Shown here: in pieces, positions 1-62,640 of the stretch
Layout: every line of letters begins with the position of its first letter
Position numbering within the stretch: the stretch's first letter is position 1
Source: Octopus sinensis
Lineage: Eukaryota
NCBI RefSeq assembly: GCF_006345805.1
Contig: NC_043002.1
Location: 22,754,001 to 22,818,000, forward strand
Reading direction: 5' to 3'
Length of the DNA stretch: 64,000 nucleotides
Notes under the pieces: generated by a model
The model's input: the letters and a program-made list of their open reading frames with translations, nothing else
Databases searched by the model: none
What the model was told of the DNA's origin: nothing
Program-made: the position numbers and the translations under genes

Positions 1-2265
1 CTTGACTGTGTCTAATATAAATGGCACTGTGAATCTGCTGGGAATCACTTCTCTATGTTTTTCTAACCAGTATTTAATCGCCTTTATTCCTAAATCGTGT
101 GGAATATTGGTGTAGAGGCTTACCACATCAAAACTTAGTAAAACTGAATTTGTTTCTGTTGTTTTGGGAAGATGGGACAGGAAGTCGATGTCATCCCTGA
201 TGAAACTTGGTATGTAAGTACATAGTGGTTTCAAAACAATGTCAATAAAATTGCTTAGACGGTGTGTAGGGCATGCTGGACCAGCTATAATAGGTCTAAG
301 TTTTAGGTCTTTTGGATGTAATAATTTTATGTACTCACTTTCTTGTTCTTTTACTGCCTGTTGAATGTTTTTGATTTGTGTATTTTTGGTAAGCCGTAGA
401 AGTTGCTGGGTTTTGGTTCAAAATTGGTGATGTAGTCTTTTTCATTATCCGTAAGTGAGTTGTGGTGTGTTGAAATCAGGTTGTTGATCTTTTTCATGAT
501 GTGGTGGTCTATATTTGCGGGTATTTCACAATAGAAGGTTGTATCCTTCAGTTGGTCTTCAACCAAATCCTTATAGTATTCGGTATCCATAATAACAATT
601 GCACCACCTTTATCTGCTTGTTTAATTATTATTGTTTGATCGTTTTGTATACGTTTACATGCAGACATCTCTGATTTGCTAATGTTTGGCCTAACATTGG
701 TATTGCGTCTAAGGGGAAATTTAGACAGGATATCAATGTATTGGTCAAGGTAGTTATTTCTTCCTTTTGGTGGGGTGAAATTTGATTTATTCCTTACTAG
801 GGATTCATCAATCTCATTACTTTTGTTAGCGAAGAATTCTACAAGTCGTAATTTTCGACAGAATTTTTGGATATCCTCCTTTAATTCTTGGTGGTTGGCT
901 GTTGGTGTAGGTGTGAATTTCAGTCCTTTTGACAGAAGTTGGATTTCATCATTGTCAAAATCTCTTTTTGATAAATTAATTATTTTAGGATCTATACGTT
1001 CAGTTGTTTGGGGTATGTTTCCTCTTGGATTTTTTCTTTCTCCGGTGTTTGTTGTCCTGACGTAAAAAAATGGATTTTTTCTGGTTATGATTTATATTCC
1101 TGTTGATGTTTGCTTGATGAATTTTGCGTTTTGGTTGTGGTACTTTACTTGGTTTCGTTATGTTTTCTGTCTTGTTTTTGGTATTATGTATGCTACTTTT
1201 CAATTTCTTGTTAGCATTGTTTTTAACCACCTGGAGAAATGATCTGGGTTTACTTCTAGATCTAGATCGGTTTTTTGTCCAGTTTCTTGTGGGTAATCTC
1301 TGTTGAGGTCTTGAAAATGATGTTATTTTCTACTGCTAATGGTCTGTTCAAAACAATATCTATTGTTTGTGCTTTTTGTTCATGTTGTGTGCATTGGGGT
1401 GTTTGCATACAAAATGGGAAGAGTTCTTACCGTAGTTCGTCTTCGATTCGTGGTGAAACAGGTGTTCATGTTGCCACGTGTTCTGGTGTATGTTGCGTTG
1501 GTGAGGTTGTCCACTTTTAATGCTATTTCTCGGAGCTCTGTTGTCTTTACCGTAGTTTGTAGCATATTTGTCGAGAAATAATTGTTTCCGCTGCCAAAAC
1601 TTTCTTGATCTGCTTTCTTCTTTTGAGATATCTCTGATCCATAGTTCTCGCATTTTTTCTGCTATATTGCCGGTCGTTAGTTTGGATATTTCATCTCTGA
1701 TTTGATCATCGATAGCTTCGTATTTGGCTTTGTAGCGGGATTGTTTAGACAGGGTAATGGAGATGTCGGTCCTGAATTTTATCAAACTAAGGTCCCATCG
1801 AAGTTTAGTTTCTTCCTCTGTTTCTCCTGCAATTTCTTTAATTAGGTACTTCCGAGGAAGTATGGGTGCCGCTAAAGATATCCATTCGAATGTTTCAGCA
1901 TATTTTTCGCATTTATATGCCTTCCAGAAGTTTTGTTTTCTTATGTTAAGGAGTTTTTTCCATGTCTTCTGTATCTCTTCTCTTTTTCGGTGTGCCTCTT
2001 TTTCCAGATTTCTTTCGTTTATTTCTGACATCCAAGGAGGTTGTGGTAGGCTTTCTCTTGTAGATTTTATAATTGGTATCATTTCAGCTAAATTCTTAAT
2101 TTCAGAGTTTATGTGTTCATTCCAAAGTTTCCGTCTGTAGAGTTTTTCTATTTCCTTTAAAATAGAGGATTGTGTGTCAATCATCGTGATGAGTGTTGAT
2201 AATTTCGATGAAATTTCCATTAGAATTCTTCTGATTCTGTAATTTGTTTGTTGCTTTCCAGACAT
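1..2265 (-). mobile_element. Penelope-like retroelement, 5' part (long N-terminal region plus RT), frameshifted, runs off the window
   Basis: LLSKGLKFTPTP, IIIKQADKGGAIVIMD, FYGLPKIHK, LRPIIAGPACPT, SFDVVSLYTNIP; frameshifts near 365 and 1000-1400. Confidence 0.9.
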
Positions 2266-2338
2266 GTTGGCATATACAAATAGGAATATAGAATAATATT
2301 ATATGGGTGTGTGTGATTGTGTATAGAAGAATATATTA

Positions 2339-2390
<52 letters not shown>

Positions 2391-2474
2391 ATATTATATA
2401 TATTATATATTATATATATTATAATATATATACATATATAAGCTTACTTAGAATTGGATGTGTGGCGTTCAATC

Positions 2475-2506
<32 letters not shown>

Positions 2507-2691
2507 TAATAATAATAATATAATATAATAATAATAATAATATTAATAATAATAATAATAATAATAACATATATATATTATATATGTAGTAATAAATGCA
2601 TATAATAATTATATATATTGCATATAATATATGATATTATATATAATATAATATATATATCTATATATATATGCATACACTATATATATAT

Positions 2692-2725
<34 letters not shown>

Positions 2726-2801
2726 ATACATATATATAAATAAACTATATATATATGCATATATATATATATATATATATATGATATATATATATATATA
2801 T

Positions 2802-2834
<33 letters not shown>

Positions 2835-2855
2835 GAGTCTATATATATATATATA

Positions 2856-4733
2856 CCGGGCTTCCGAAAATCCGCCCATCCATTAGATCTTCCATGGGCG
2901 TTTATTTTGATGGGCGGTTATTTGAGGTTAAAAGTTGAAACAGAGTGTTCTTGTTTGCATTCTGTTAAGGCGTTCATTTGCTCTCCGTCTGTAGATAAAT
3001 TCAAAGGATTTTTATTCCCAATAATGAAGTCGAAAGAAAATATATCAAAGCGTGTTCAACGATCATATACCATGAGTGAAAAATTGAGTCCTATTAAACG
3101 AGTAAAAGAACATTCTGGCAATTTATCTGCTACTTCAAGAGACAGGTATTGATAGAAAACGATTGAGTTAAACTGAGTTAAACCATATGTCAAACCAGGG
3201 GAGGCGCAGATCAATTTGTGGAGGTAGAGGACCAGCACAGGGATCTGGAGATTGAACTCTTACAGTGAATTCTTTTTCAGCGTGCAAACAATATAATTGT
3301 AAATTATCGCCGTTTACGGGAATATACGTTCGAATTGGTAAAAAGGTTTGGAATTGAAATGAACAGCTTTAGACGTTCTGATAACTGGATTTTCAATTTC
3401 ATGAAACAGAATAAACGGACTCTGAGAAAGATTACACATGTTGGTCAAGCAGACAATAAAACACTTGGAGAAAAGGCACAGATCGCCAGTGACTATCTAG
3501 ATAGCATTCCAGTATTAGCAGCATATAAGGATGCTGACCAGATTTATAATATGAATGAAACACCTGTATACGTTGTCATGTTGAGTTCAATAACCATAGA
3601 CATTTTTGGCAATAAAAATGTAGATGCTAGCAACTGTGGTGCTACCAAACCTGGTTTTACTGTTGTGTTGTGTGTTAATGCTGCAGGAAAGGTGTTAAAA
3701 ACAATGATTATCCTTAAAGGATTGAAAAACGTGCCTAAAATTAAGGTCCCAAAGAATAGTTACATAAGTCTCCAACAAGAGATCAATCACATATGAACTC
3801 ATGCAGCTGTGGGCCGACAAAATGTTTGGGCAGAGAACAGCACAATTATTCCATGCTCAAAATTCAGTGCTATTCATGGATGAATGCTCAGTGCACAAGA
3901 AATCAGAGCTGCTAGAAGTGTTCAATCGTAGGAATACAATTCTCAAACTTATTCCTCCTAAAACAACATGTTACTTGCAGCCGTTAGATGTATCAATTAT
4001 TGGTCCTTTCAAGAAAGCCCTTCGTGCAGAACGGGAGAATTGGTTTTCAAACGGCAAAAAGGAGCATACAAATAAAGGATATCGCAAAAAACCTTATCAA
4101 GAGATAGTGAACTTTGTGACCCAAGATGTTGCCACTTTGAATAAAGAAACTATAACGCGTGCTTTTGAACGCTGTGGAATTGCTCATAGTGGACAGACTA
4201 TAAGAACAGAGCGTCTTAAACTCACGCTTACAGAATGTTTTGTCTGGACTTGAGGTAAATGCACCAGATGCTCATAATGACAAAATTGAAGATGAGATAC
4301 AAATGAAATTTGCTCTGATGTGAATTACGGCCAAGCAACAAATGAAGAAATTCGTGATATTTAACTTGAAACTATTCGGTTATAATTCTACCATAAATGC
4401 CCAAGGACATTATTTGTTCATAGGAGGCTTCTATTCATGTTTTCAACAGTTTAATTTTCAATATTTCCTAATAGATCCAGAATATTTTTTAATATGCTAC
4501 TTCTTTTAATGTGGTTTCAGTTTCTTTATGTCTATATATCTGATAACTGAAGCGATAGAAGTTCAAAGGAATTGTATAAAATAAATATGGTTTTTGAGAA
4601 TATCGTTGTTTTTCCCAGGTGAAATATTTTACTTCCATATTACCGCCCATGGGCGCTTATTATAGGTGGGCGGTTATATAAGCCAAAAAATAGTTTTCGT
4701 TTCACAGCCCTTGACGGATTTTCGGAAAACCCT

Positions 4734-4735
<2 letters not shown>
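2856..4735 (+). mobile_element. pogo/Tigger-family DNA transposon, decayed
   Basis: TIRs CCGGGCTTCCGAAAATCCG / CGGATTTTCGGAAAACCCTGG within (TA)n; DDE_1 motifs YNMNETP (D to N), LFMDECSVH, YLQPLDVSI; split ORF. Confidence 0.9.
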
Positions 4736-4785
<50 letters not shown>

Positions 4786-4873
4786 CATATATATATGCAC
4801 ACACACAGACACACAGACACACACATATATATCTATGTATATGTATGTATATATATATGCACATATATATATG

Positions 4874-4910
<37 letters not shown>

Positions 4911-5049
4911 TTAAATACATACATATATGTGTTTGTGTGTATGCGTGTGTGTGCATACACATGTATCTATGTATGTATGTGTGTATGTGTGTATGTATGT
5001 ATGTATGTATGTATGTATGTATGTATGTATGTATGTATGTGTATTTATA

Positions 5050-6306
5050 CGAGGTCGTATCAAAACTTCCCGGAATAGTCCTGTAGCACGCCAACTGATG
5101 GCAGTACATGGTTGCGTACGTAGTGAGAGCTAGCAGTACTTTGCGTTTTTGTGATCACGTGTAAGCTGTAGTGTGTGAGGGCGCGTGGCTTAGTGGTTAG
5201 GGCATTCGGCTCATGATCGTGAGGTTGTGAGTTCGATTCCCGGCGACGCGTTGTGTCCTTGAGCAAAACACTTTATTTCACGTTGCTCCAGTCCACTCAG
5301 CTGGCAAAAGTGAGTTGTACTTGTATTTCAAAGGGTCAGCCTTGTCACTCTCTGTGTCACGCTGATTATCCCCGAGAACTACGTTAAGGGTACACGTGTC
5401 TGTGGAATGCTCAGCCATTTGCACGTTAATTTCACGAGCAAGCTGTTCCGTTGATCGTATCAGCTGGGACCCTCGTCGTCGTAACCGGCGGAGTCTTATT
5501 TTAAGCTGTAGTGTGCGATTTTGTCATGGACAGGAACAAAGAATCAACGTGAAATTTTGCATGAAACTTGGGAAGTCTGCTACAGAGACATTGAGCATGT
5601 TTCGGCTAGCTTACAATAACGAAGCAATGGGCCGTACGCGTTTCGAGTGGCACAAGTGCTTCAAAAGCGGAAAACGTCTCTGGAATACCCGGAGACGAAG
5701 CAGTAGTTGTCACAATGGAAGAGGACTTCATCTCCGCGACCGAAGAAAGTACGACGGAACCACACCTCAATCAAAAACATACTCGTAATTTTTATTTGAC
5801 ACCCACGGTACTGTGCATCGAGAATTCGTCCGCCATGGTCAAACAGTCAATCGAGAGTTCTCCTGCCACGTTTGGAAGCGTTTGCGGGAGGACATTCGAC
5901 GAAAGCGACCGGATCTGTGAAGCGCGAAGACCGGTCTCACCTTATTCACCAAGCTGTCACCGAGTTCTTGTCACTCATGAGTTTCTCGCCAAAAAATTCA
6001 ACATTCAACCCGCCTTATTCGCCAAATTTACCACCGGCGGACTTCTATTTCTTCTCTAAGATGAAAATGCAGCTCAAAGGTTATCGTTTTAACACCGTTG
6101 TCGAGATCCAGAGCAATTCGCAGAAGGTCCTCGATTTACTCACAGAAAATGACTTTCAAGCTGGATCCTAAAAGTGGCAGGAACACTGAGACGGGTGTAT
6201 TGCTGCGCAAGATGACTATTTCGAAGGAGATGATGTTAAAACTAGGTAAATAAGTTATTTTTTTTATTAAGCATAACTAGTCCAGGAACATTTTGATACC
6301 ACCTCG
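5050..6306 (+). mobile_element. mariner transposon, decayed, interrupted by a SINE
   Basis: TA-flanked TIRs CGAGGTCGTATCAAAA / TTTTGATACCACCTCG; EQRINVKFC..LGKSATET, PPYSP.L.PADF. Confidence 0.9.
5176..5501 (+). mobile_element. tRNA-derived SINE with CORE-like body
   Basis: A/B boxes, GTGTCCTTGAGCAAAACACTT, 14-bp TSD TAAGCTGTAGTGTG at 5162 and 5502. Confidence 0.9.
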
Positions 6307-6859
6307 TATATCTTTATCGGTATATTTTAATGTTCTGGCGCACTTATTCGATTGTGAGAGGAGTTTTCCACAGTTTGGCTTTGGTGTTCTGTCCATCAAT
6401 GTAATGATTCAATCATTTTAAAATCCGAAGTTGCATGAATTGGCCATGTTATCTAACTTGCTAATTAAGTGCTTGCCAAAGTAGCTATACCAACAATGGT
6501 CATTATGATAGAATAGTTGGCAATTTATATCAAATTTAGTCATTTGTGTTTGTCGAATCCATCGAAACGTCGACAAGATCATTGAATTTAGACTCGTTTT
6601 ACCCAAGCTGGTTAGCTGCCAAAGAGCAGTGAGAAGTACGCATAATGAGATGTATTTATATGATTTTTCAGCTGACAAAATTGCATGTGAAATCTAAATC
6701 TTTAACTAGAATGTAATAACAACACATGGGGAATATTACAAATAAGCCTTGAGCTAAGGTCACCCATATTTGATGTTAGGCATGAGATACTTTCCTTGCA
6801 ATATCTAGATACCTGCTAGATGTAATTTAGTCAGATTAATATATTAGACAGCAGAGATA

Positions 6860-7760
6860 GAGATATTTTAATTTACACCATCGTTTTCCGTCGAGACATT
6901 AATTTAATGAAAGTAGACTTCTTAGCCACATTATTGAATCTAAAATCAAGTATCTATAAAAGTTTTCATAAGCCAAATGAATAATTAAGTTATCTTAATA
7001 AACATTCCTACCACTCACTATAATCTTTATAAAGCACATTTCCAACGTAAGTCTTAGCATTTCCAATCTGTTCTCCTGTAAAGAGAGTTTTGACAACACA
7101 ATCCCTACCATAACAGAGTCCTGATAAGCAGCAGCCTCAAGGAAAAGTAAGTCTATATCCACCACCAGAACCAAAAGATCCAGTAATAATATCAGTAAAA
7201 TCATCTTGTTCGCAACACATTTCTCTTTAAACGTTAAAACTAATCTACGAAGGACATAACTGGCATTTTAGACAAGTATTTCCCAGTACACTGTCTTTAT
7301 AAGAGCTTCAACCGATGCACCTAAAAATCAGTTACTACTGCGCTCTCTATACGGAATCAGTAACACAAGGGGAAAAAATGGCATTGGAAATAAAAAGTTC
7401 ATGTAGAAAGAAAGATAAACGTTCTTTAGACAAAACAAGTAGCACCAGATCAGTCGCATATAAAGCAAAGATCACCTCAACCACGCCGAATCGAAAAGTG
7501 GAGATATAAACGTTATATACGCACCACCGAAAGTCTATTTAAATGAAGATCCAATAACCATTTGTCATTCTTCAAACATCCAGATGACTGGAGAGTCATC
7601 ATATTTGCAGGCCTTATCTGCTTTTACAAAAACAGAAAATCCACTAATGGCATTAAATGGAAGGTCTGGAGAAGCCAAAGACCAATGCAAATGGATCCAA
7701 GGAGTAAAACTCTGCCTGTCAAAGAAGTGTCTCAACACTAAAATTGAAATTTTACACGAT
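6860..7760 (+). mobile_element. Decayed Penelope-like element (RT thumb to GIY-YIG C-terminus)
   Basis: KVDFLA, FSLNVKTN..ILDKYFP, FNR..LKISY, IKWKV, LCLSKK across broken frames. Confidence 0.7.
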
Positions 7761-8361
7761 GCGTGTGTGTGTGTGTGTTTGTGTGTTTGTATGCGCACAC
7801 ACACACATTTTCTCGCTGTTTTTTAATACTAAAAGTCCGTTATTTGATTCTGGCTATTATTAGTCCTTCACGAATGGCTATTTGGATCGACATATAAGTG
7901 GAGGTACGTGTGAAAGCGTGATTATATTTGTCTATGTGTGTATCATAGATCAATATATCTAACTAGGTATTCTCTGTATGCATGAGTATGACAGCAATAT
8001 GTGCGTATTCCAGAAAGCGCACGCACACGTATAGTTTTTAGTGTGTGTGTGTTTGTGTGTGTATTTGGGTCATAAATAAAAACCTATGAGGTTCACGTAC
8101 AAAATATATTCCTCAGTTTGTTCCCATTCAAGTCGACATTTTCACGTAACAAACTTATGATTTCCTTCTAACCTTTAGCCTTCTAACCTTTAGTTATTGT
8201 TTTTGACGTTGTTGCTGTAGATGTTATTATTGTTTACGCTGCTGTTGTTGTAGGTGTTGTTGTTTAGTCCCAGGTCAGCTCTAATTGAGCAGACCTATAA
8301 CTAAAGACACTCTAGCTGTGACTATCCCGTCTCTATTTTTTTTTTTCAATTTTTTTCACAG

Positions 8362-9220
8362 TTTGTACCGGTTGGCCTCCAAGAAAACTCCAAAGCCTGA
8401 TTGCATGATAAAAGTATTCGCTTCCGTCCTTCTCGTACCTCTTTTGCCATCTTATACCAACGCGGAATTCCGTGGCAAAGCAGATATATTTACTGCAGTA
8501 CTCAGGTACTTGGTCTATTTAAGAATGGCCGGAATAACCTTTCAAGAAGAAGAAGAATCGCCACCGAAAAAGGGCAAAAAATCCAAAAAGCAATGCAGCC
8601 GAGAATCATCTAAAGAATCACAAGACGGAAGTAAGAGATCGGAGAGAAGATGCTTTTCAGATATACTACCAAAGAAAAAAGGCAAAAAGTCCAAAAAGCA
8701 ATCCACCCAAGAAGTCCCGCAAGACGGCGCTAAGTCAGGTTCTAGGTGCTTTCCTTATGACCAAGAAGAAACACCCAAGAAAAAAGGTAAAAAGTCGAAA
8801 AAGGCGTCAGCCAGCCGAGAAGTTTCGAAGGAGTCATACGCCAGCGTTAAGTCAGGAGCTAGTTCCACAAATGATCCTAAACCTGACGAAAGTATGTGCA
8901 AACAGGCATGCCGCCGAGAACCTTCAAATGGATGCGAAATACCATTTCCGAGGTGCAGTGCAGAGGGCATAATAGAAGTAAATCCACCGACAGATCGAGA
9001 AACATCTGCGGAGTCCAACGAAAGCCAAAGAAAAAAGGCTTTCACTAAATCGCAGGAGAGTGTTAACTCAGTTGCTTTTAAGTCACAAGAGAGCGTTAAG
9101 TCTGCGAAAAGCAACGCATCACAGGGGAGAAAGAAAAGTTTTCTGGGGAAATTGTGCAACAGAAAGAAAAAGGATAAAGACAAGGTGTCGTGCGAAGATA
9201 TACCAAAGTTGGTAGACTAA
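8362..9220 (+). CDS. Terminal coding exon of a second, convergent BCR/ABR-like RhoGAP gene with a lysine-rich repeat tail
   Basis: Acceptor tttttttcacag| in phase 2, the same phase as the exon 24/25 junction. LYRLASKK..IKVFASVLLVP..DIFTAVLRYLV matches the RhoGAP C-terminus and exons 25-26 of the minus gene. Open to TAA at 9220. Upstream exons were not found in the window. Confidence 0.75.
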
Positions 9221-9387
9221 TCAGATTCGGGATTTGCTTATCTAATGTAAACATTTAATTATATTTAGAAAATACACATACAAATATATGTAAAAAATAT
9301 ATATGCACGCATAAACTATATATGTTCACATACACACAGATATACACACACATGCACATATATGTATATATTTACAATATGCATATG

Positions 9388-9504
<117 letters not shown>

Positions 9505-11879: not shown

Positions 11880-13260
11880 GCTGTGCTTGTTGTTTCCTTA
11901 CATGTAAACAAGAATAGGATCTTTGCTATAGATGCGTTTGAACCGGAGGAAATGTGTAATGTTGTGTGTAGTGTGAGTAAAATTCGAGGCAAACGTGGAA
12001 TTTATAGGTGTATAGGGAAGCGATGAGAAGCAGTAGACGTGATCGACATAGAGGGAATGTCTAGGAACTTGATGGAAGCGTTTGGGGTGGCTGAGGCACA
12101 ATTCAGTGCAGCAGTTTTCTGGGGAGTGATGTCACACCTATGCATGCATTTGATAGATGTAACGACTTTATAACTCATAGGGAGGTTCAGTAACATGGGT
12201 ATAATATCCAAAAAGCAAGATGGTCCATATTTCTACCTAAAGTGTCAGAGGAGAACACAAGAGAAATGACGATATTCCAAATAAAGAGTTCATTGGAACG
12301 AAGGTGTATAAATGTTCTACGTTTAAATATAGAGTGAAAGTAAAAAAGAAAATGGGAGATGAGAAACCGTACGTCTATAATGGAATGACGTTTAGAGGGT
12401 CCAGAAGGGGCGTGGGTAATGTATTAAACAAATGAATGGTTAAAAGAGATAGGTATTAGTTCCGTGCGACAAGCGGCGTTGATAGGAATGATAGGAAAAC
12501 TAGAACGCTGGTCTTCTGAATTTAGGTGAGGGTATATGTATTTGTTCCTTGTCGAGCCACGCCTGGCTCATAAGGGCCGGTTTCCCGGTTTCATTGGCGT
12601 ATAGGTTATCCACCTGGACAGGACGCCGGTCCGTCGTAGGTGAGCTGCAAGATGCAATAGGAAAGAGTAAGAGAAAGTTGTGGCGAAAGAGTCAGCAGAA
12701 GTTCGCCTTTACCTTCTGCCGGAGCCGCGAGGAGCTTAGGTGTTTCGCTCATAAACACACATATCGCCCGCTCTGAGATTCGAACCCGCGATCCCTCGAC
12801 CGCAAGTCCGCTGCTCTAACCACTAGGCCATGTGCCTCCACTATATATAGTGGATGTGCAGAATGATTTGGGGACGAAGTGGGTGAATATAGGAGGAAGT
12901 AGAGAAGAGCTGTTGAATTCTGGTAAAAGATGAGATTTTCGGTTTGGAAGTATCTGGACAGTAGGTTACCTCCCAGTAGAGATATGCACTTAAAGGCCAT
13001 TACTGCTCCGCTCATATCGGTTAGCTTGATGACAATGTAATCTGATGTTAATATATGAGCCATCGTGGTAACTGTACCGAAAAATATTTCAGGAAAGAAA
13101 ATCAAAACAAAGAGAATTACAAGGTAATTAACTGTGCGCTGTAATGAAGAAACAGAAGAAAGTTCGACGTTTCAGATGGTGATCCTTTCTCAAGATAATG
13201 CGTGGGGAAAAGTGAAAAGAAAACATAGATAATGTGAATGTTCAGTGGTGGTTCTAAAAT
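11880..13260 (-). mobile_element. Decayed Penelope-like RT, interrupted by a SINE
   Basis: DYIVIKLTDMSGAV (~IKPADKGGAV), KFLDI, HFLRFKRIYSKD (~QFLRLRRICS). Confidence 0.6.
12548..12840 (-). mobile_element. tRNA-SINE (head and body shared with the 24022 family, different tail)
   Basis: Head TGGAGGCACATGGCCTAGTGG..GGTTCGAATC; tail GAAACCGGCCCTTATGAGCC. Confidence 0.85.
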
Positions 13261-13969
13261 GGGCAGAACATGTAAAAGAATAACTGAAAGAAATAACAGA
13301 ACTGATTAGCCTTCTCCAGCAGAAGAGTGGTCTCAATTAAATGAAGCTGATTGGCGAAAGGTTTTGTGTATATGTAGTGGGTTATCGAGAATGAATTTTC
13401 TGTATGTGCAGATAAGTTTGTGAAGCAATGTGTGTGCAATGCGGTTAAGTGTATGCACGTGTATGGTACAGTATAAGAGTGTGTTATGCATGTGTGTTGT
13501 ATATGTGTATGTATGCTTGTGTATAGTGCTGCGTGCACCCGTGTGTGTACGTGTATGTGTGTGCGTTACTGTGTGTTTGATCATGAATGAATGAATATGA
13601 GAGGGTGATCTGTAGATGAATATAGAAGCAGGAAGAGAATGTTTTGTCTGTAGATGTTTGTGTATAGAGAAGAAATAAATACATGCCGCATGCACAGAAG
13701 GCTGGAGAGAGGAGAACTGTTAGTTATGAAAAGCGAACTTGTTATTCATTCCAACGAGGTGAGTTATGGACGAAAAGTTGGTAGTCGTTCTTTGTACAAA
13801 CGAGAAGTGGTTGGTCCGTAGACAAACAGCCTGACAGAGAAACAGGCGCACTGGTAGACAGACAGATTGATGGATAGATAAACAGACAAGCAGACAGATA
13901 GACAGACAGACAGACAGTTAGACAGACAGCCATACAAACAGATAGATAGAGAGACATACATACATACAT

Positions 13970-14520: not shown

Positions 14521-15039
14521 GTTTATTGTACAAGGAAAGTGGGGAACTATGTACTATTGATAGAACAGTGCTGTAATATCTGTCCTTTCATTATAAAATG
14601 AAGGGACAGATAAATCAGGCGAAGAATCTAGTTTTGGGTGTGATGAATAAATAAGCAACTCTGAAAATAAGTGAAAGGAACTCTAGGAATTACGGTCACG
14701 TCTGAAAGAATGAAGGGAACGTTCCAAGAAGATGGCGTAAATGGCGAGGTCAGACTGCTTCTCTTCATCTTCTACCCTACCACGCTATCACCCCAACATA
14801 CCATTCCACAACCCTTTTTGTCCTGCACAGTCTGACTCCGCTATTTGCACTAATTAGTCCATGATAGCTCTTTGTTTCTTCAGCACACTCACTCTTCGTC
14901 CTTCGCCTGCTTTTTCTTCCACTGTAGGACTTATCCATCCAGAAAAAGAAAAAAAACGTCATCATGCACGTATCTAACCCTTATTGTTACATTGTCAACT
15001 CCTTCACTTATACCACAAACAACCTCACTTATTGAATAA

Positions 15040-17143: not shown

Positions 17144-62640
<45,497 letters not shown>

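What the first reader, a model, noticed from the sequence alone, without database searches (positions are those of the whole stretch)
8362..9220. Convergent BCR/ABR-like paralog with a novel polybasic KKGKKSKK-repeat tail
Seen: this plus-strand terminal exon starts in the same phase and with the same LY.. motif as exon 25 of the minus gene. It lacks the exon 25/26 intron and continues about 225 aa beyond the GAP domain. The tail has three ~35-aa repeats (about 8563, 8668, 8773), each with (K)KKGKKSKK, two of them preceded by RCF. Inference: a tail-to-tail, lineage-specific cluster of BCR/ABR duplicates, one of which gained an NLS, lipid-binding or microtubule-binding tail.
Basis: partly seen in the sequence, partly recalled or inferred. 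Interest (0 to 1): 0.7.

Follow-up and report, generated by a model that had tools for sequence, protein, structure and literature searches.

The report
Duplicated RhoGAP exon with polybasic tail
An octopus coding exon descended from the last exon of the neighbouring BCR/ABR-like RhoGAP gene now carries a 224-residue, fast-evolving, lysine-rich repeat tail and is kept intact in three octopus genomes, but nothing yet shows that it still belongs to a complete RhoGAP gene.

Summary
The exon is real. It is an 858-nt open frame (8362-9220, +) behind a conserved branch-point-like motif, polypyrimidine tract and AG.

Its first 52 codons align without gaps, from the acceptor and in the same phase, to the last GAP exon of the convergent minus-strand BCR/ABR-like gene (13/52 identities, P about 1e-5). 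So it descends from a RhoGAP terminal exon.

The three 35-36-aa KKGKKSKK repeats are confirmed at 8561, 8669 and 8774. The tail evolves almost neutrally (dN/dS 0.6-1.0) yet stays open in three octopus species. The first 47 residues after Met 8405 and about 140 nt of upstream intron are 97-100% conserved.

What is not shown is a whole paralogous gene. No other RhoGAP exon lies on the plus strand in 8.3 kb upstream here, or in 10 kb upstream in O. bimaculoides. There the orthologue is annotated as a stand-alone 275-aa uncharacterised protein starting at that Met, and a second copy of this exon alone sits 9.4 kb upstream.

My best reading (about 0.45) is an exon-level duplicate that became a small lineage-specific gene. 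Transcript junction data would decide.

The parts
8220..8361 (+). Highly conserved intron end. It holds a branch-point-like GTGAC (8318-8322), a polypyrimidine tract (8323-8358) and the AG (8360-8361).
   Evidence: 8220-8539 is the longest block at >=96% identity in about 10 kb of alignment to O. bimaculoides (background 88.6%). GTGAC, the poly-Y tract and YAG are also kept in the old tandem paralogue P1 of O. bimaculoides (cAG versus tAG).
8362..9220 (+). The exon or ORF of the finding: one split-codon base, then 285 codons, then TAA.
   Evidence: Orthologues are P0001 (O. bimaculoides, 72% identity) and P0002 (Logan run SRR11869394, 60%).
8363..8404 (+). Fourteen open codons (LYRLASKKTPKPDC) between the acceptor and the first ATG. 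They are either coding sequence or 5' UTR.
   Evidence: The frame is open and free of indels in all four copies. P1 versus P2 gives dN 0.17 and dS 0.39 from 8 substitutions, which is too few to decide.
8405..8545 (+). Conserved module from Met 8405 (MIKVFASVLLVPLLPSYTNAEFRGKADIFTAVLRYLVYLRMAGITF). It corresponds to the last RhoGAP helices, and read from the Met it looks like a signal peptide.
   Evidence: 97-100% nucleotide identity to O. bimaculoides. P1 versus P2 gives dS 0.91, dN 0.24, omega 0.26. Grafted onto minus exons a-d it extends the Pfam RhoGAP match to position 144/148, which 6 shuffles do not. AlphaFold2 predicts helices 3-10 and 20-41.
8546..9217 (+). Tail of 224 residues: disordered, basic (pI 9.6), rich in Lys, Ser and Glu, with 9 Cys.
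   Evidence: pLDDT is below 50 almost throughout. dN/dS is 0.96, 0.64 and 0.63. Only 0.2-0.3% of neutrally mutated copies stay open at the divergence from O. bimaculoides, and none of 3000 at the divergence from the third species.
8561..8668 (+). Repeat 1 (PPKKGKKSKKQCSRESSKESQDGSKRSERRCFSDIL).
   Evidence: family D1 (reference copy).
8669..8773 (+). Repeat 2 (PKKKGKKSKKQSTQEVPQDGAKSGSRCFPYDQEET).
   Evidence: 84% identity to repeat 1 over the 45-nt core, spacing 108 nt.
8774..8878 (+). Repeat 3 (PKKKGKKSKKASASREVSKESYASVKSGASSTNDP), more diverged.
   Evidence: 60% identity over the core, spacing 105 nt.
9128..9199 (+). Conserved C-terminal basic and Cys cluster (RKKSFLGKLCNRKKKDKDKVSCED).
   Evidence: Nearly invariant in the three orthologues.
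17144..17366 (-). Terminal exon e of the convergent BCR/ABR-like gene ((K)[24 protein letters not shown]...SRTSFY*). It is the homologue of the plus exon.
   Evidence: It adds 22.6 bits to the Pfam RhoGAP match.
20678..20783 (-). Minus gene GAP exon d ([36 protein letters not shown]).
21967..22101 (-). Minus gene GAP exon c. The Lys and Arg of LLK..FLRELPEPL are replaced ([13 protein letters not shown]).
25263..25340 (-). Minus gene GAP exon b. The arginine-finger motif GIYRVSG reads NIYLTNG.
28267..28328 (-). Minus gene GAP exon a ([21 protein letters not shown]).
37733..38068 (-). Minus gene C2 exon (approximate limits).
   Evidence: tblastn to the human BCR C2 region, E=8.6e-6. Pfam C2 E=3.9e-4, just under the curated cut-off.

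Best explanation
The exon is an old, exon-level duplicate of the last RhoGAP exon of a BCR/ABR-like gene. It now works as the coding exon of a small Octopus-restricted gene, the orthologue of O. bimaculoides LOC106877770.

Shown:
1. It shares the intron position, the phase and a gap-free alignment with the neighbour's terminal GAP exon.
2. Its reading frame is under selection. The module is under purifying selection, and the tail is kept open against stops and frameshifts.
3. The 3' splice site signals are conserved.
4. The tail arose partly by three-fold tandem duplication of a 105-108-nt unit.
5. The exon itself was duplicated in tandem in O. bimaculoides.

Inferred:
1. Translation starts at Met 8405, after splicing of an untranslated upstream exon onto the acceptor at 8361/8362. 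The product is 271 aa.
2. The former GAP helix (MIKVFASVLLVPLLPSYTNA|EF) now serves as a hydrophobic N-terminal targeting or signal segment. The second former helix forms a conserved amphipathic helix.
3. The disordered tail acts through charge. Three PKKKGKKSKK clusters and a C-terminal RKKS..KKKKDKDK cluster, with conserved Cys and Ser, would bind polyanions (acidic membranes, nucleic acids or matrix), possibly tuned by Ser phosphorylation.
4. It has no GAP activity of its own, because it carries none of the catalytic part of the domain.
For: Descent from the RhoGAP exon:
- Anchored ungapped alignment: z about 5, P about 1e-5 for the window, O. bimaculoides and Logan copies, and P=1.2e-4 for paralogue P1.
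- Identity sits at codon positions 1 and 2, not 3.
- In the same register the module also matches ARHGAP15, ARHGAP12 and BCR segments (P=0.002-0.016).
- The Pfam RhoGAP alignment extends to position 144/148 only with the real module, not with 6 shuffles.

Real coding exon:
- P1 versus P2 omega is 0.26.
- The three orthologous ORFs differ by in-frame gaps only.
- Only 0.2-0.3% of neutrally mutated tails stay open at the smaller divergence, and 0 of 3000 at the larger.

Stand-alone gene:
- XP_014782264.1 and UniProt A0A0L8GCA2 give the same 275-aa product starting at this Met, with a single CDS exon.
- No plus-strand RhoGAP exon lies in 8.3 kb upstream here or in 10 kb upstream in O. bimaculoides. 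That DNA is old transposon debris shared by both species.
- A second copy of this exon alone lies 9.4 kb upstream in O. bimaculoides.
- No protein among 1.84 billion representatives joins this module to anything else.
- The module has lost most of the RhoGAP signature (+2.6 bits against +22.6 for the minus exon), yet it is now almost invariant. That fits a new role.
- From the Met the N-terminus has n/h/c regions like a signal peptide (Lys3; an 11-residue core with mean Kyte-Doolittle 2.7; T-N-A at -3 to -1).
- The rest is predicted disordered.
Against: - No transcript was seen. The annotated models may rest on exon coverage alone.
- The conserved acceptor means that some upstream exon exists, and it could be coding.
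- The 14 codons before the Met are open, indel-free and as conserved at the protein level as the module (64% versus 63% between P1 and P2).
- The ATG context is weak (T at -3).
- Two helices of a seven-helix domain that are this conserved could equally be packing against the rest of a GAP-like domain encoded upstream.
- Octopus introns here run to about 3-10 kb, so an upstream exon could simply lie outside both sequences.
- No signal-peptide predictor was run.
- The Cys count is odd and varies between species.
Confidence: 0.45

Rival explanations
1. The exon is still the terminal exon, perhaps one of two alternative terminal exons (P1 acidic and short, P2 basic and long), of a plus-strand BCR/ABR-like, probably catalytically dead, RhoGAP gene. 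The other exons would lie further upstream, outside the window. The polybasic tail would then target that protein to acidic membranes or the nucleus.
For: - Same intron position and phase as the parent exon.
- GTGAC, poly-Y tract and YAG are conserved in orthologues and in the old paralogue. About 140 nt of the flanking intron is also conserved (8220-8361; about 110 nt aligns with P1), as is usual beside regulated exons.
- The pre-ATG codons are open and conserved.
- The module is almost invariant, as expected if it packs into a larger fold.
- Two tandem copies of a last exon behind one gene is a known layout for alternative 3' ends (from my own knowledge).
Against: - No exon a-d equivalent is found upstream in either species.
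- No database protein joins the module to a RhoGAP domain.
- Both O. bimaculoides annotations start at the Met.
- The module has lost the NKM and FGP features of the GAP fold.
Confidence: 0.3
2. The exon was captured by an unrelated plus-strand host gene and serves as its (alternative) last coding exon.
For: The acceptor is conserved and the frame is open from the acceptor. No RhoGAP exon is nearby.
Against: It needs a phase-2 donor in the host. Annotation in O. bimaculoides gives a separate locus. No chimeric protein appears in the databases.
Confidence: 0.1
3. It is a non-functional relic: an untranslated pseudo-exon whose open frame and conservation come from something else, such as a regulatory element.
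For: The tail has dN/dS near 1 between the two closest species. The module shows low dS as well as low dN, and the conserved block runs into non-coding DNA. There is no canonical AATAAA within 480 nt downstream.
Against: The frame is kept open over 224 stop-prone codons in three species, with in-frame gaps only. P1 versus P2 omega is 0.26 with dS 0.91. Identity to the parent exon sits at codon positions 1 and 2.
Confidence: 0.05

Closest known systems
BCR/ABR family (DH-PH-C2-RhoGAP Rac/Cdc42 GAPs)
   Same: The neighbouring minus gene has PH-like, C2 and RhoGAP exons in that order. The plus exon is homologous to its last GAP exon, at the same intron position and phase.
   Different: Only the last two helices of the domain are present here. 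There are no DH, PH, C2 or catalytic exons. The tail is 224 aa and polybasic, whereas BCR ends about 20 residues after the last helix in a PDZ-binding motif (from my own knowledge). The plus protein's C-terminus is not conserved between species.
Arginine-finger-less RhoGAP-like domains (p85, OCRL1, ARHGAP36, DEPDC1, FAM13B; listed in PMC8305018)
   Same: The minus gene has Leu for the arginine finger, and Val and Leu for the Lys and Arg pair. The plus module has likewise lost the NKM and FGP features.
   Different: Those are whole folded domains used as scaffolds. For the plus exon no whole domain has been found.
Polybasic membrane-targeting regions with a phospho-switch (K-Ras4B hypervariable region, MARCKS effector domain, polybasic regions of several RhoGAPs)
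   Same: Lys runs are interrupted by a conserved Ser (KKGKKSKK three times, and RKKSFLGKL), with conserved Cys nearby. This resemblance is from my own knowledge and was not tested.
   Different: There is no CaaX box or myristoylation signal. Three clusters are spread over a long disordered chain, which could equally be read as three classical monopartite nuclear localisation signals.
Genes with an ultra-conserved signal or pro region and a near-neutral mature region (the organisation known from cone-snail venom peptide superfamilies)
   Same: The N-terminal 47 residues and the flanking non-coding DNA are nearly invariant, even at synonymous sites, while the rest evolves at dN/dS 0.6-1.0 with several Cys kept.
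   Different: The mature part here is long, disordered and lysine-rich, not a small disulphide knot. Secretion is not shown, and there is no sequence relationship to any toxin family.
New genes made by partial duplication of a parent gene
   Same: A fragment of a parent gene, namely one exon with its acceptor, was duplicated next to the parent, kept a frame, gained a novel low-complexity extension and was duplicated again.
   Different: The promoter and first exon of the new unit are unknown.

Membership tests
RhoGAP domain (Pfam PF00620) | Significant match to the domain profile | tested here: not met
   The exon product alone gives no RhoGAP hit even at E<=10 and no PDB hit at E<=10. Only when grafted onto minus exons a-d does it extend the match, by 2.6 bits. 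It is a remnant of the domain, not a domain.
RhoGAP domain (Pfam PF00620) | Catalytic arginine finger and the Lys/Arg binding pair (Arg282, Lys319, Arg323 in p50RhoGAP numbering; PMC8305018) | not testable with these tools
   These residues lie in exons that would be upstream of this one, and none was found. In the minus neighbour they are Leu, Val and Leu.
RhoGAP domain (Pfam PF00620) | Descent from a RhoGAP exon (homology, intron position and phase) | tested here: met
   (P about 1e-5; same phase; codon-position signature).
BCR/ABR family | DH-PH-C2-RhoGAP architecture in one gene | tested here: inconclusive
   For the plus exon, no such exons lie on the plus strand in 8.3 kb (window) or 10 kb (O. 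bimaculoides) upstream, and sequence further upstream was not available. For the minus gene, PH-like, C2 and GAP exons were seen, and no DH was seen within the window.
BCR/ABR family | Short C-terminus ending in a class I PDZ-binding motif (from my own knowledge) | tested here: not met
   The plus products end in ...PKLVD...ELCDV and ...EICEE after a 224-aa tail.
Secreted protein with a cleavable signal peptide | N-terminal n/h/c regions with small residues at -3 and -1, at the true N-terminus | tested here: inconclusive
   The pattern is present from Met 8405 (MIK / VFASVLLVPLL / PSYTNA|EF; mean Kyte-Doolittle 2.7) and is kept in P1. No predictor was run, and whether this Met is the N-terminus is unknown.
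Polybasic membrane-binding or NLS tail | Clusters of at least 5 Lys/Arg in a disordered region, conserved across species | tested here: met
   This concerns composition and conservation only. Binding and localisation were not tested.

The most novel reading that the evidence does not exclude
A buried helix of a RhoGAP domain has been recycled as a signal peptide. A duplicated last exon of a BCR/ABR-like gene became a tandemly expanding family of secreted, disordered, polybasic, Cys-bearing octopus proteins. The signal and pro region and its flanking DNA are frozen while the mature part drifts at nearly the neutral rate. This would be a clear case of an intracellular domain fragment turned into a secretory leader.
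Probability: 0.2. Interest if true: 0.6.

Novelty: new member of a known kind. Interest (0 to 1): 0.35.

Why it matters
It gives a datable, sequence-level example of how a lineage-restricted gene can arise. One exon, with its splice acceptor, was copied from a signalling gene. It kept its frame, gained a new tail by tandem repeat growth, and now shows a striking split between a frozen 47-residue head and a nearly neutral tail.

It also attaches an origin to an 'uncharacterised protein' of O. bimaculoides. And it flags the neighbouring BCR/ABR-like gene as an unannotated, probably catalytically dead GAP. Beyond cephalopod genome annotation the impact is modest, unless the head proves to be a recycled signal peptide or the two copies prove to be alternative tails of one GAP-like protein.

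Tried and rejected
- Ordinary searches do not see the RhoGAP relationship. Pfam on the exon product gave nothing. PDB phmmer gave nothing. tblastn of the exon against the window did not find the minus exon at E<=50. Pairwise BLASTP was only E=0.011, with a 3-aa gap that borrows intron-encoded residues. The anchored test replaced these.
- HMMER of the 67-aa head against 1.84 billion representatives found only its own cluster and P0003, a translated tandem repeat that I regard as spurious.
- A search with minus-gene exons found no annotated relative.
- A profile search with alignment A2 returned 'no candidate', which is at odds, so I treat it as uninformative.
- The Logan contigs L001 and L003 are colinear with the intron and end in microsatellites. 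They look genomic and carry no splicing information.
- Rfam gave only sub-threshold microsatellite hits and nothing in 8220-8540.
- No candidate 'exon 26' of the minus gene was found between 9.3 and 17.1 kb.
- The orthologous site of the minus terminal exon could not be seen in O. bimaculoides, because colinearity ends at window 15787.
- Literature searches for LOC106877770 and SRR11869394 found nothing.
It was used only to locate exons.

Full report
WHAT THE WINDOW IS. The window is AT-rich eukaryotic DNA full of microsatellites and decayed DNA transposons. Its non-coding DNA aligns colinearly at 86-89% identity with Octopus bimaculoides chromosome CM046606.1, so it comes from a related octopus.

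THE OBSERVATION. On the plus strand an open frame runs from 8285 to 9220. At 8361/8362 there is a textbook 3' splice site (...tctctattttttttttttcaatttttttcacag|T). From 8363 the frame gives 285 codons and then TAA. Three direct repeats start at 8561, 8669 and 8774, spaced 108 and 105 nt. Each begins (P)KKGKKSKK, and the second and third are preceded by RRCF and SRCF.

THE MINUS-STRAND NEIGHBOUR.
They are PH-like at 53.5 and 43.6 kb, C2 at 38.0 kb (E=8.6e-6), and GAP pieces at 28.3, 20.7 and 17.4 kb.
- Reading the DNA, I placed five GAP exons with mutually consistent splice phases: a 28328-28267, b 25340-25263, c 22101-21967, d 20783-20678 and e 17366-17144.
- Spliced together they match Pfam RhoGAP at 103 bits (E=1e-29) and RhoGAP structures in the PDB (ARHGAP12 68 bits, ARHGAP15 66 bits).
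- The domain looks catalytically dead. The arginine-finger motif reads NIYLTNG, and the Lys and Arg of LLK..FLRELPEPL are Val and Leu. The roles of these residues are taken from PMC8305018.
- No annotated relative of this gene was found.

HOMOLOGY OF THE PLUS EXON TO MINUS EXON E.
- Exon d ends ...GTGAA|gtaagt and exon e starts with G. So exon e begins with the third base of a split codon, exactly as the plus exon does (xx|T).
- I aligned the two products from their first full codon with no gap. This gave 13 identities in 52, BLOSUM62 score +27 and z=5.0, reached by at most 1 of 100,000 shuffles. All 16 neighbouring offsets score -25 to -86.
- The O. bimaculoides and third-species copies behave the same way, and so does the older paralogue P1 (P=1.2e-4).
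- At the DNA level identity is 62/157 (P=5e-5). It lies at codon positions 1 and 2 (25/52, 24/52) and not at position 3 (13/52, which is chance). This is the mark of an old coding homology.
- In the same register the plus head also resembles the ARHGAP15, ARHGAP12 and BCR segments (P=0.002-0.016).
- Grafted onto minus exons a-d, it carries the Pfam RhoGAP alignment from profile position 118 to 144/148. Six shuffled versions do not. The gain is small (+2.6 bits against +22.6 for the true exon e), so most of the GAP signature is gone.

First, the 'LY' seen in the minus gene (I-Y) is encoded by the intron just before the acceptor, and the exon starts (K)VCQ. Second, the similarity continues in frame for 32 codons beyond the supposed GG|GTATGT donor (P=0.0015), and the frame then ends 24 codons after the last helix. 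So the minus gene probably has no intron there. I also found no 'exon 26' candidate downstream.

IS THE EXON A LIVE CODING SEQUENCE? Only two relatives exist among 5.8 billion proteins. They are O. bimaculoides XP_014782264.1 / A0A0L8GCA2 ('uncharacterized protein LOC106877770', 275 aa, 72% identity) and a 300-aa ORF on genomic Logan contigs of a third octopus (60%).
- Against O. bimaculoides the block 8220-8539 is the longest stretch at >=96% identity in about 10 kb of alignment. It covers about 140 nt of intron, the acceptor and the first 59 codons.
- The head has almost no changes of any kind (dS 0.03-0.10).
- The tail has dS 0.18-0.40 and dN/dS of 0.96, 0.64 and 0.63.
- Yet the tail stays open in all three species, and the species differ by in-frame gaps only.
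- In simulation only 0.2-0.3% of neutrally mutated tails remain stop-free at the smaller divergence, and none of 3000 at the larger.
So the tail is translated and selected for being there. It keeps its composition and a few islands: the three KKGKKSKK clusters, RCF twice, PFPRCSAEGI, SQESVKS and RKKS.LG.LC.KKKKDKDK..CED. Otherwise it is free to drift. AlphaFold2 gives two helices in the head (residues 3-10 and 20-41) and disorder elsewhere.

A SECOND COPY IN O. BIMACULOIDES. About 9.4 kb upstream of the orthologue, on the same strand, lies another copy of the exon (L002:516-831). It has the same GTGAC, polypyrimidine tract and YAG, the same 14 pre-ATG codons (LYLLAAKQIPKPDG), the same Met and head (63% identity), and a short acidic tail ending KKKCFENP*. 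Between the two copies the head has dS 0.91, dN 0.24 and omega 0.26. Both have therefore been under protein-level constraint since an old duplication. The equivalent position in the window would fall about 1 kb before base 1.

WHOLE PARALOGUE OR EXON-LEVEL DUPLICATE? This is the open point.
For a still-spliced coding exon:
- The acceptor signals and the flanking intron are conserved in orthologues and in the old paralogue.
- The 14 codons before the Met are open, indel-free and as conserved as the head.
- The ATG context is weak.
Against a complete RhoGAP gene:
- No a-d-like exon lies on the plus strand in window 1-8361 or in 10 kb upstream in O. bimaculoides. That DNA holds pogo- and mariner-type remnants shared by both species, plus the second exon copy.
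- No protein in either large database joins the head to anything else.
- The two accessions for O. bimaculoides carry the same 275-aa product, with a single CDS exon that starts at the Met.
Read from that Met, the head has the n/h/c layout of a cleavable signal peptide (MIK / VFASVLLVPLL / PSYTNA|EF). This hydrophobicity is inherited from the GAP helix, so it is not independent evidence.

I put about 0.45 on a stand-alone small gene that uses an untranslated upstream exon. About 0.1 goes to capture by an unrelated host gene and about 0.05 to a relic.

MECHANISM.
Shown: descent from the GAP exon, selection on the frame, repeat growth of the tail, and tandem duplication of the exon.
Inferred: the product cannot be a GAP by itself. 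Its conserved head is either a targeting or secretory leader plus an amphipathic helix, or the last two helices of a pseudo-GAP. The tail most plausibly acts electrostatically through four Lys clusters with conserved Ser and Cys. That is a layout known from polybasic membrane-binding regions and from nuclear localisation signals (comparison from my own knowledge, not tested).

NOVELTY. The protein itself is already in databases as uncharacterised. Its origin from a RhoGAP exon, the head/tail rate contrast, the tandem second copy and the dead-GAP neighbour were not found in anything I could search. The kind of event, a new gene from a partial duplicate with a low-complexity extension, is well known. 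I rate it a new member of a known kind, with interest about 0.35. It would be higher if the recycled-signal-peptide reading or the alternative-tail reading were shown.

Noticed in passing
window 17144-28328 (-), especially 25263-25340 and 21967-22101: The convergent BCR/ABR-like gene has intact, phase-consistent GAP exons. It lacks the arginine finger (NIYLTNG) and the Lys/Arg pair ([13 protein letters not shown]), so it is probably a catalytically dead GAP. No annotated orthologue was found in the protein database.
   Followed up: partly
L002:516-831 (O. bimaculoides CM046606.1, about 9.4 kb upstream of LOC106877770): An unannotated second tandem copy of the exon. It has a conserved acceptor, the same head and a short acidic tail ending KKKCFENP*. 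An assembly gap follows about 130 nt later.
   Followed up: partly
window 3335-4253 (+) and 5396-5788 (+): Decayed pogo-like DDE_1 and mariner HTH_48 transposase remnants fill the DNA upstream of the exon. They are shared with O. bimaculoides, so they are old insertions.
   Followed up: partly
window 8224-8404: There is no ATG in the 181 nt before Met 8405; the nearest upstream ATG is at 8221. This is mildly unusual for AT-rich DNA and compatible with a 5' UTR, but a T-rich tract lowers the expectation.
   Followed up: no
window 14540-14799, 13240-13399, 12860-12999, 7820-7939: Other blocks at >=96% identity to O. bimaculoides lie in the intergenic DNA between the two convergent units. There is no convincing ORF, and some look like repeat elements.
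   Followed up: no
window 15787 / L002:18052: Colinearity with O. bimaculoides ends here. The orthologous site of the minus terminal exon could not be seen in the 2.8 kb of L002 that remain, which suggests an insertion or rearrangement in one species.
   Followed up: no
window 9360-9500 and many other places: Long (TA)n, (CA)n and CATA-type microsatellites produce many spurious long ORFs and sub-threshold Rfam miRNA hits.
   Followed up: yes
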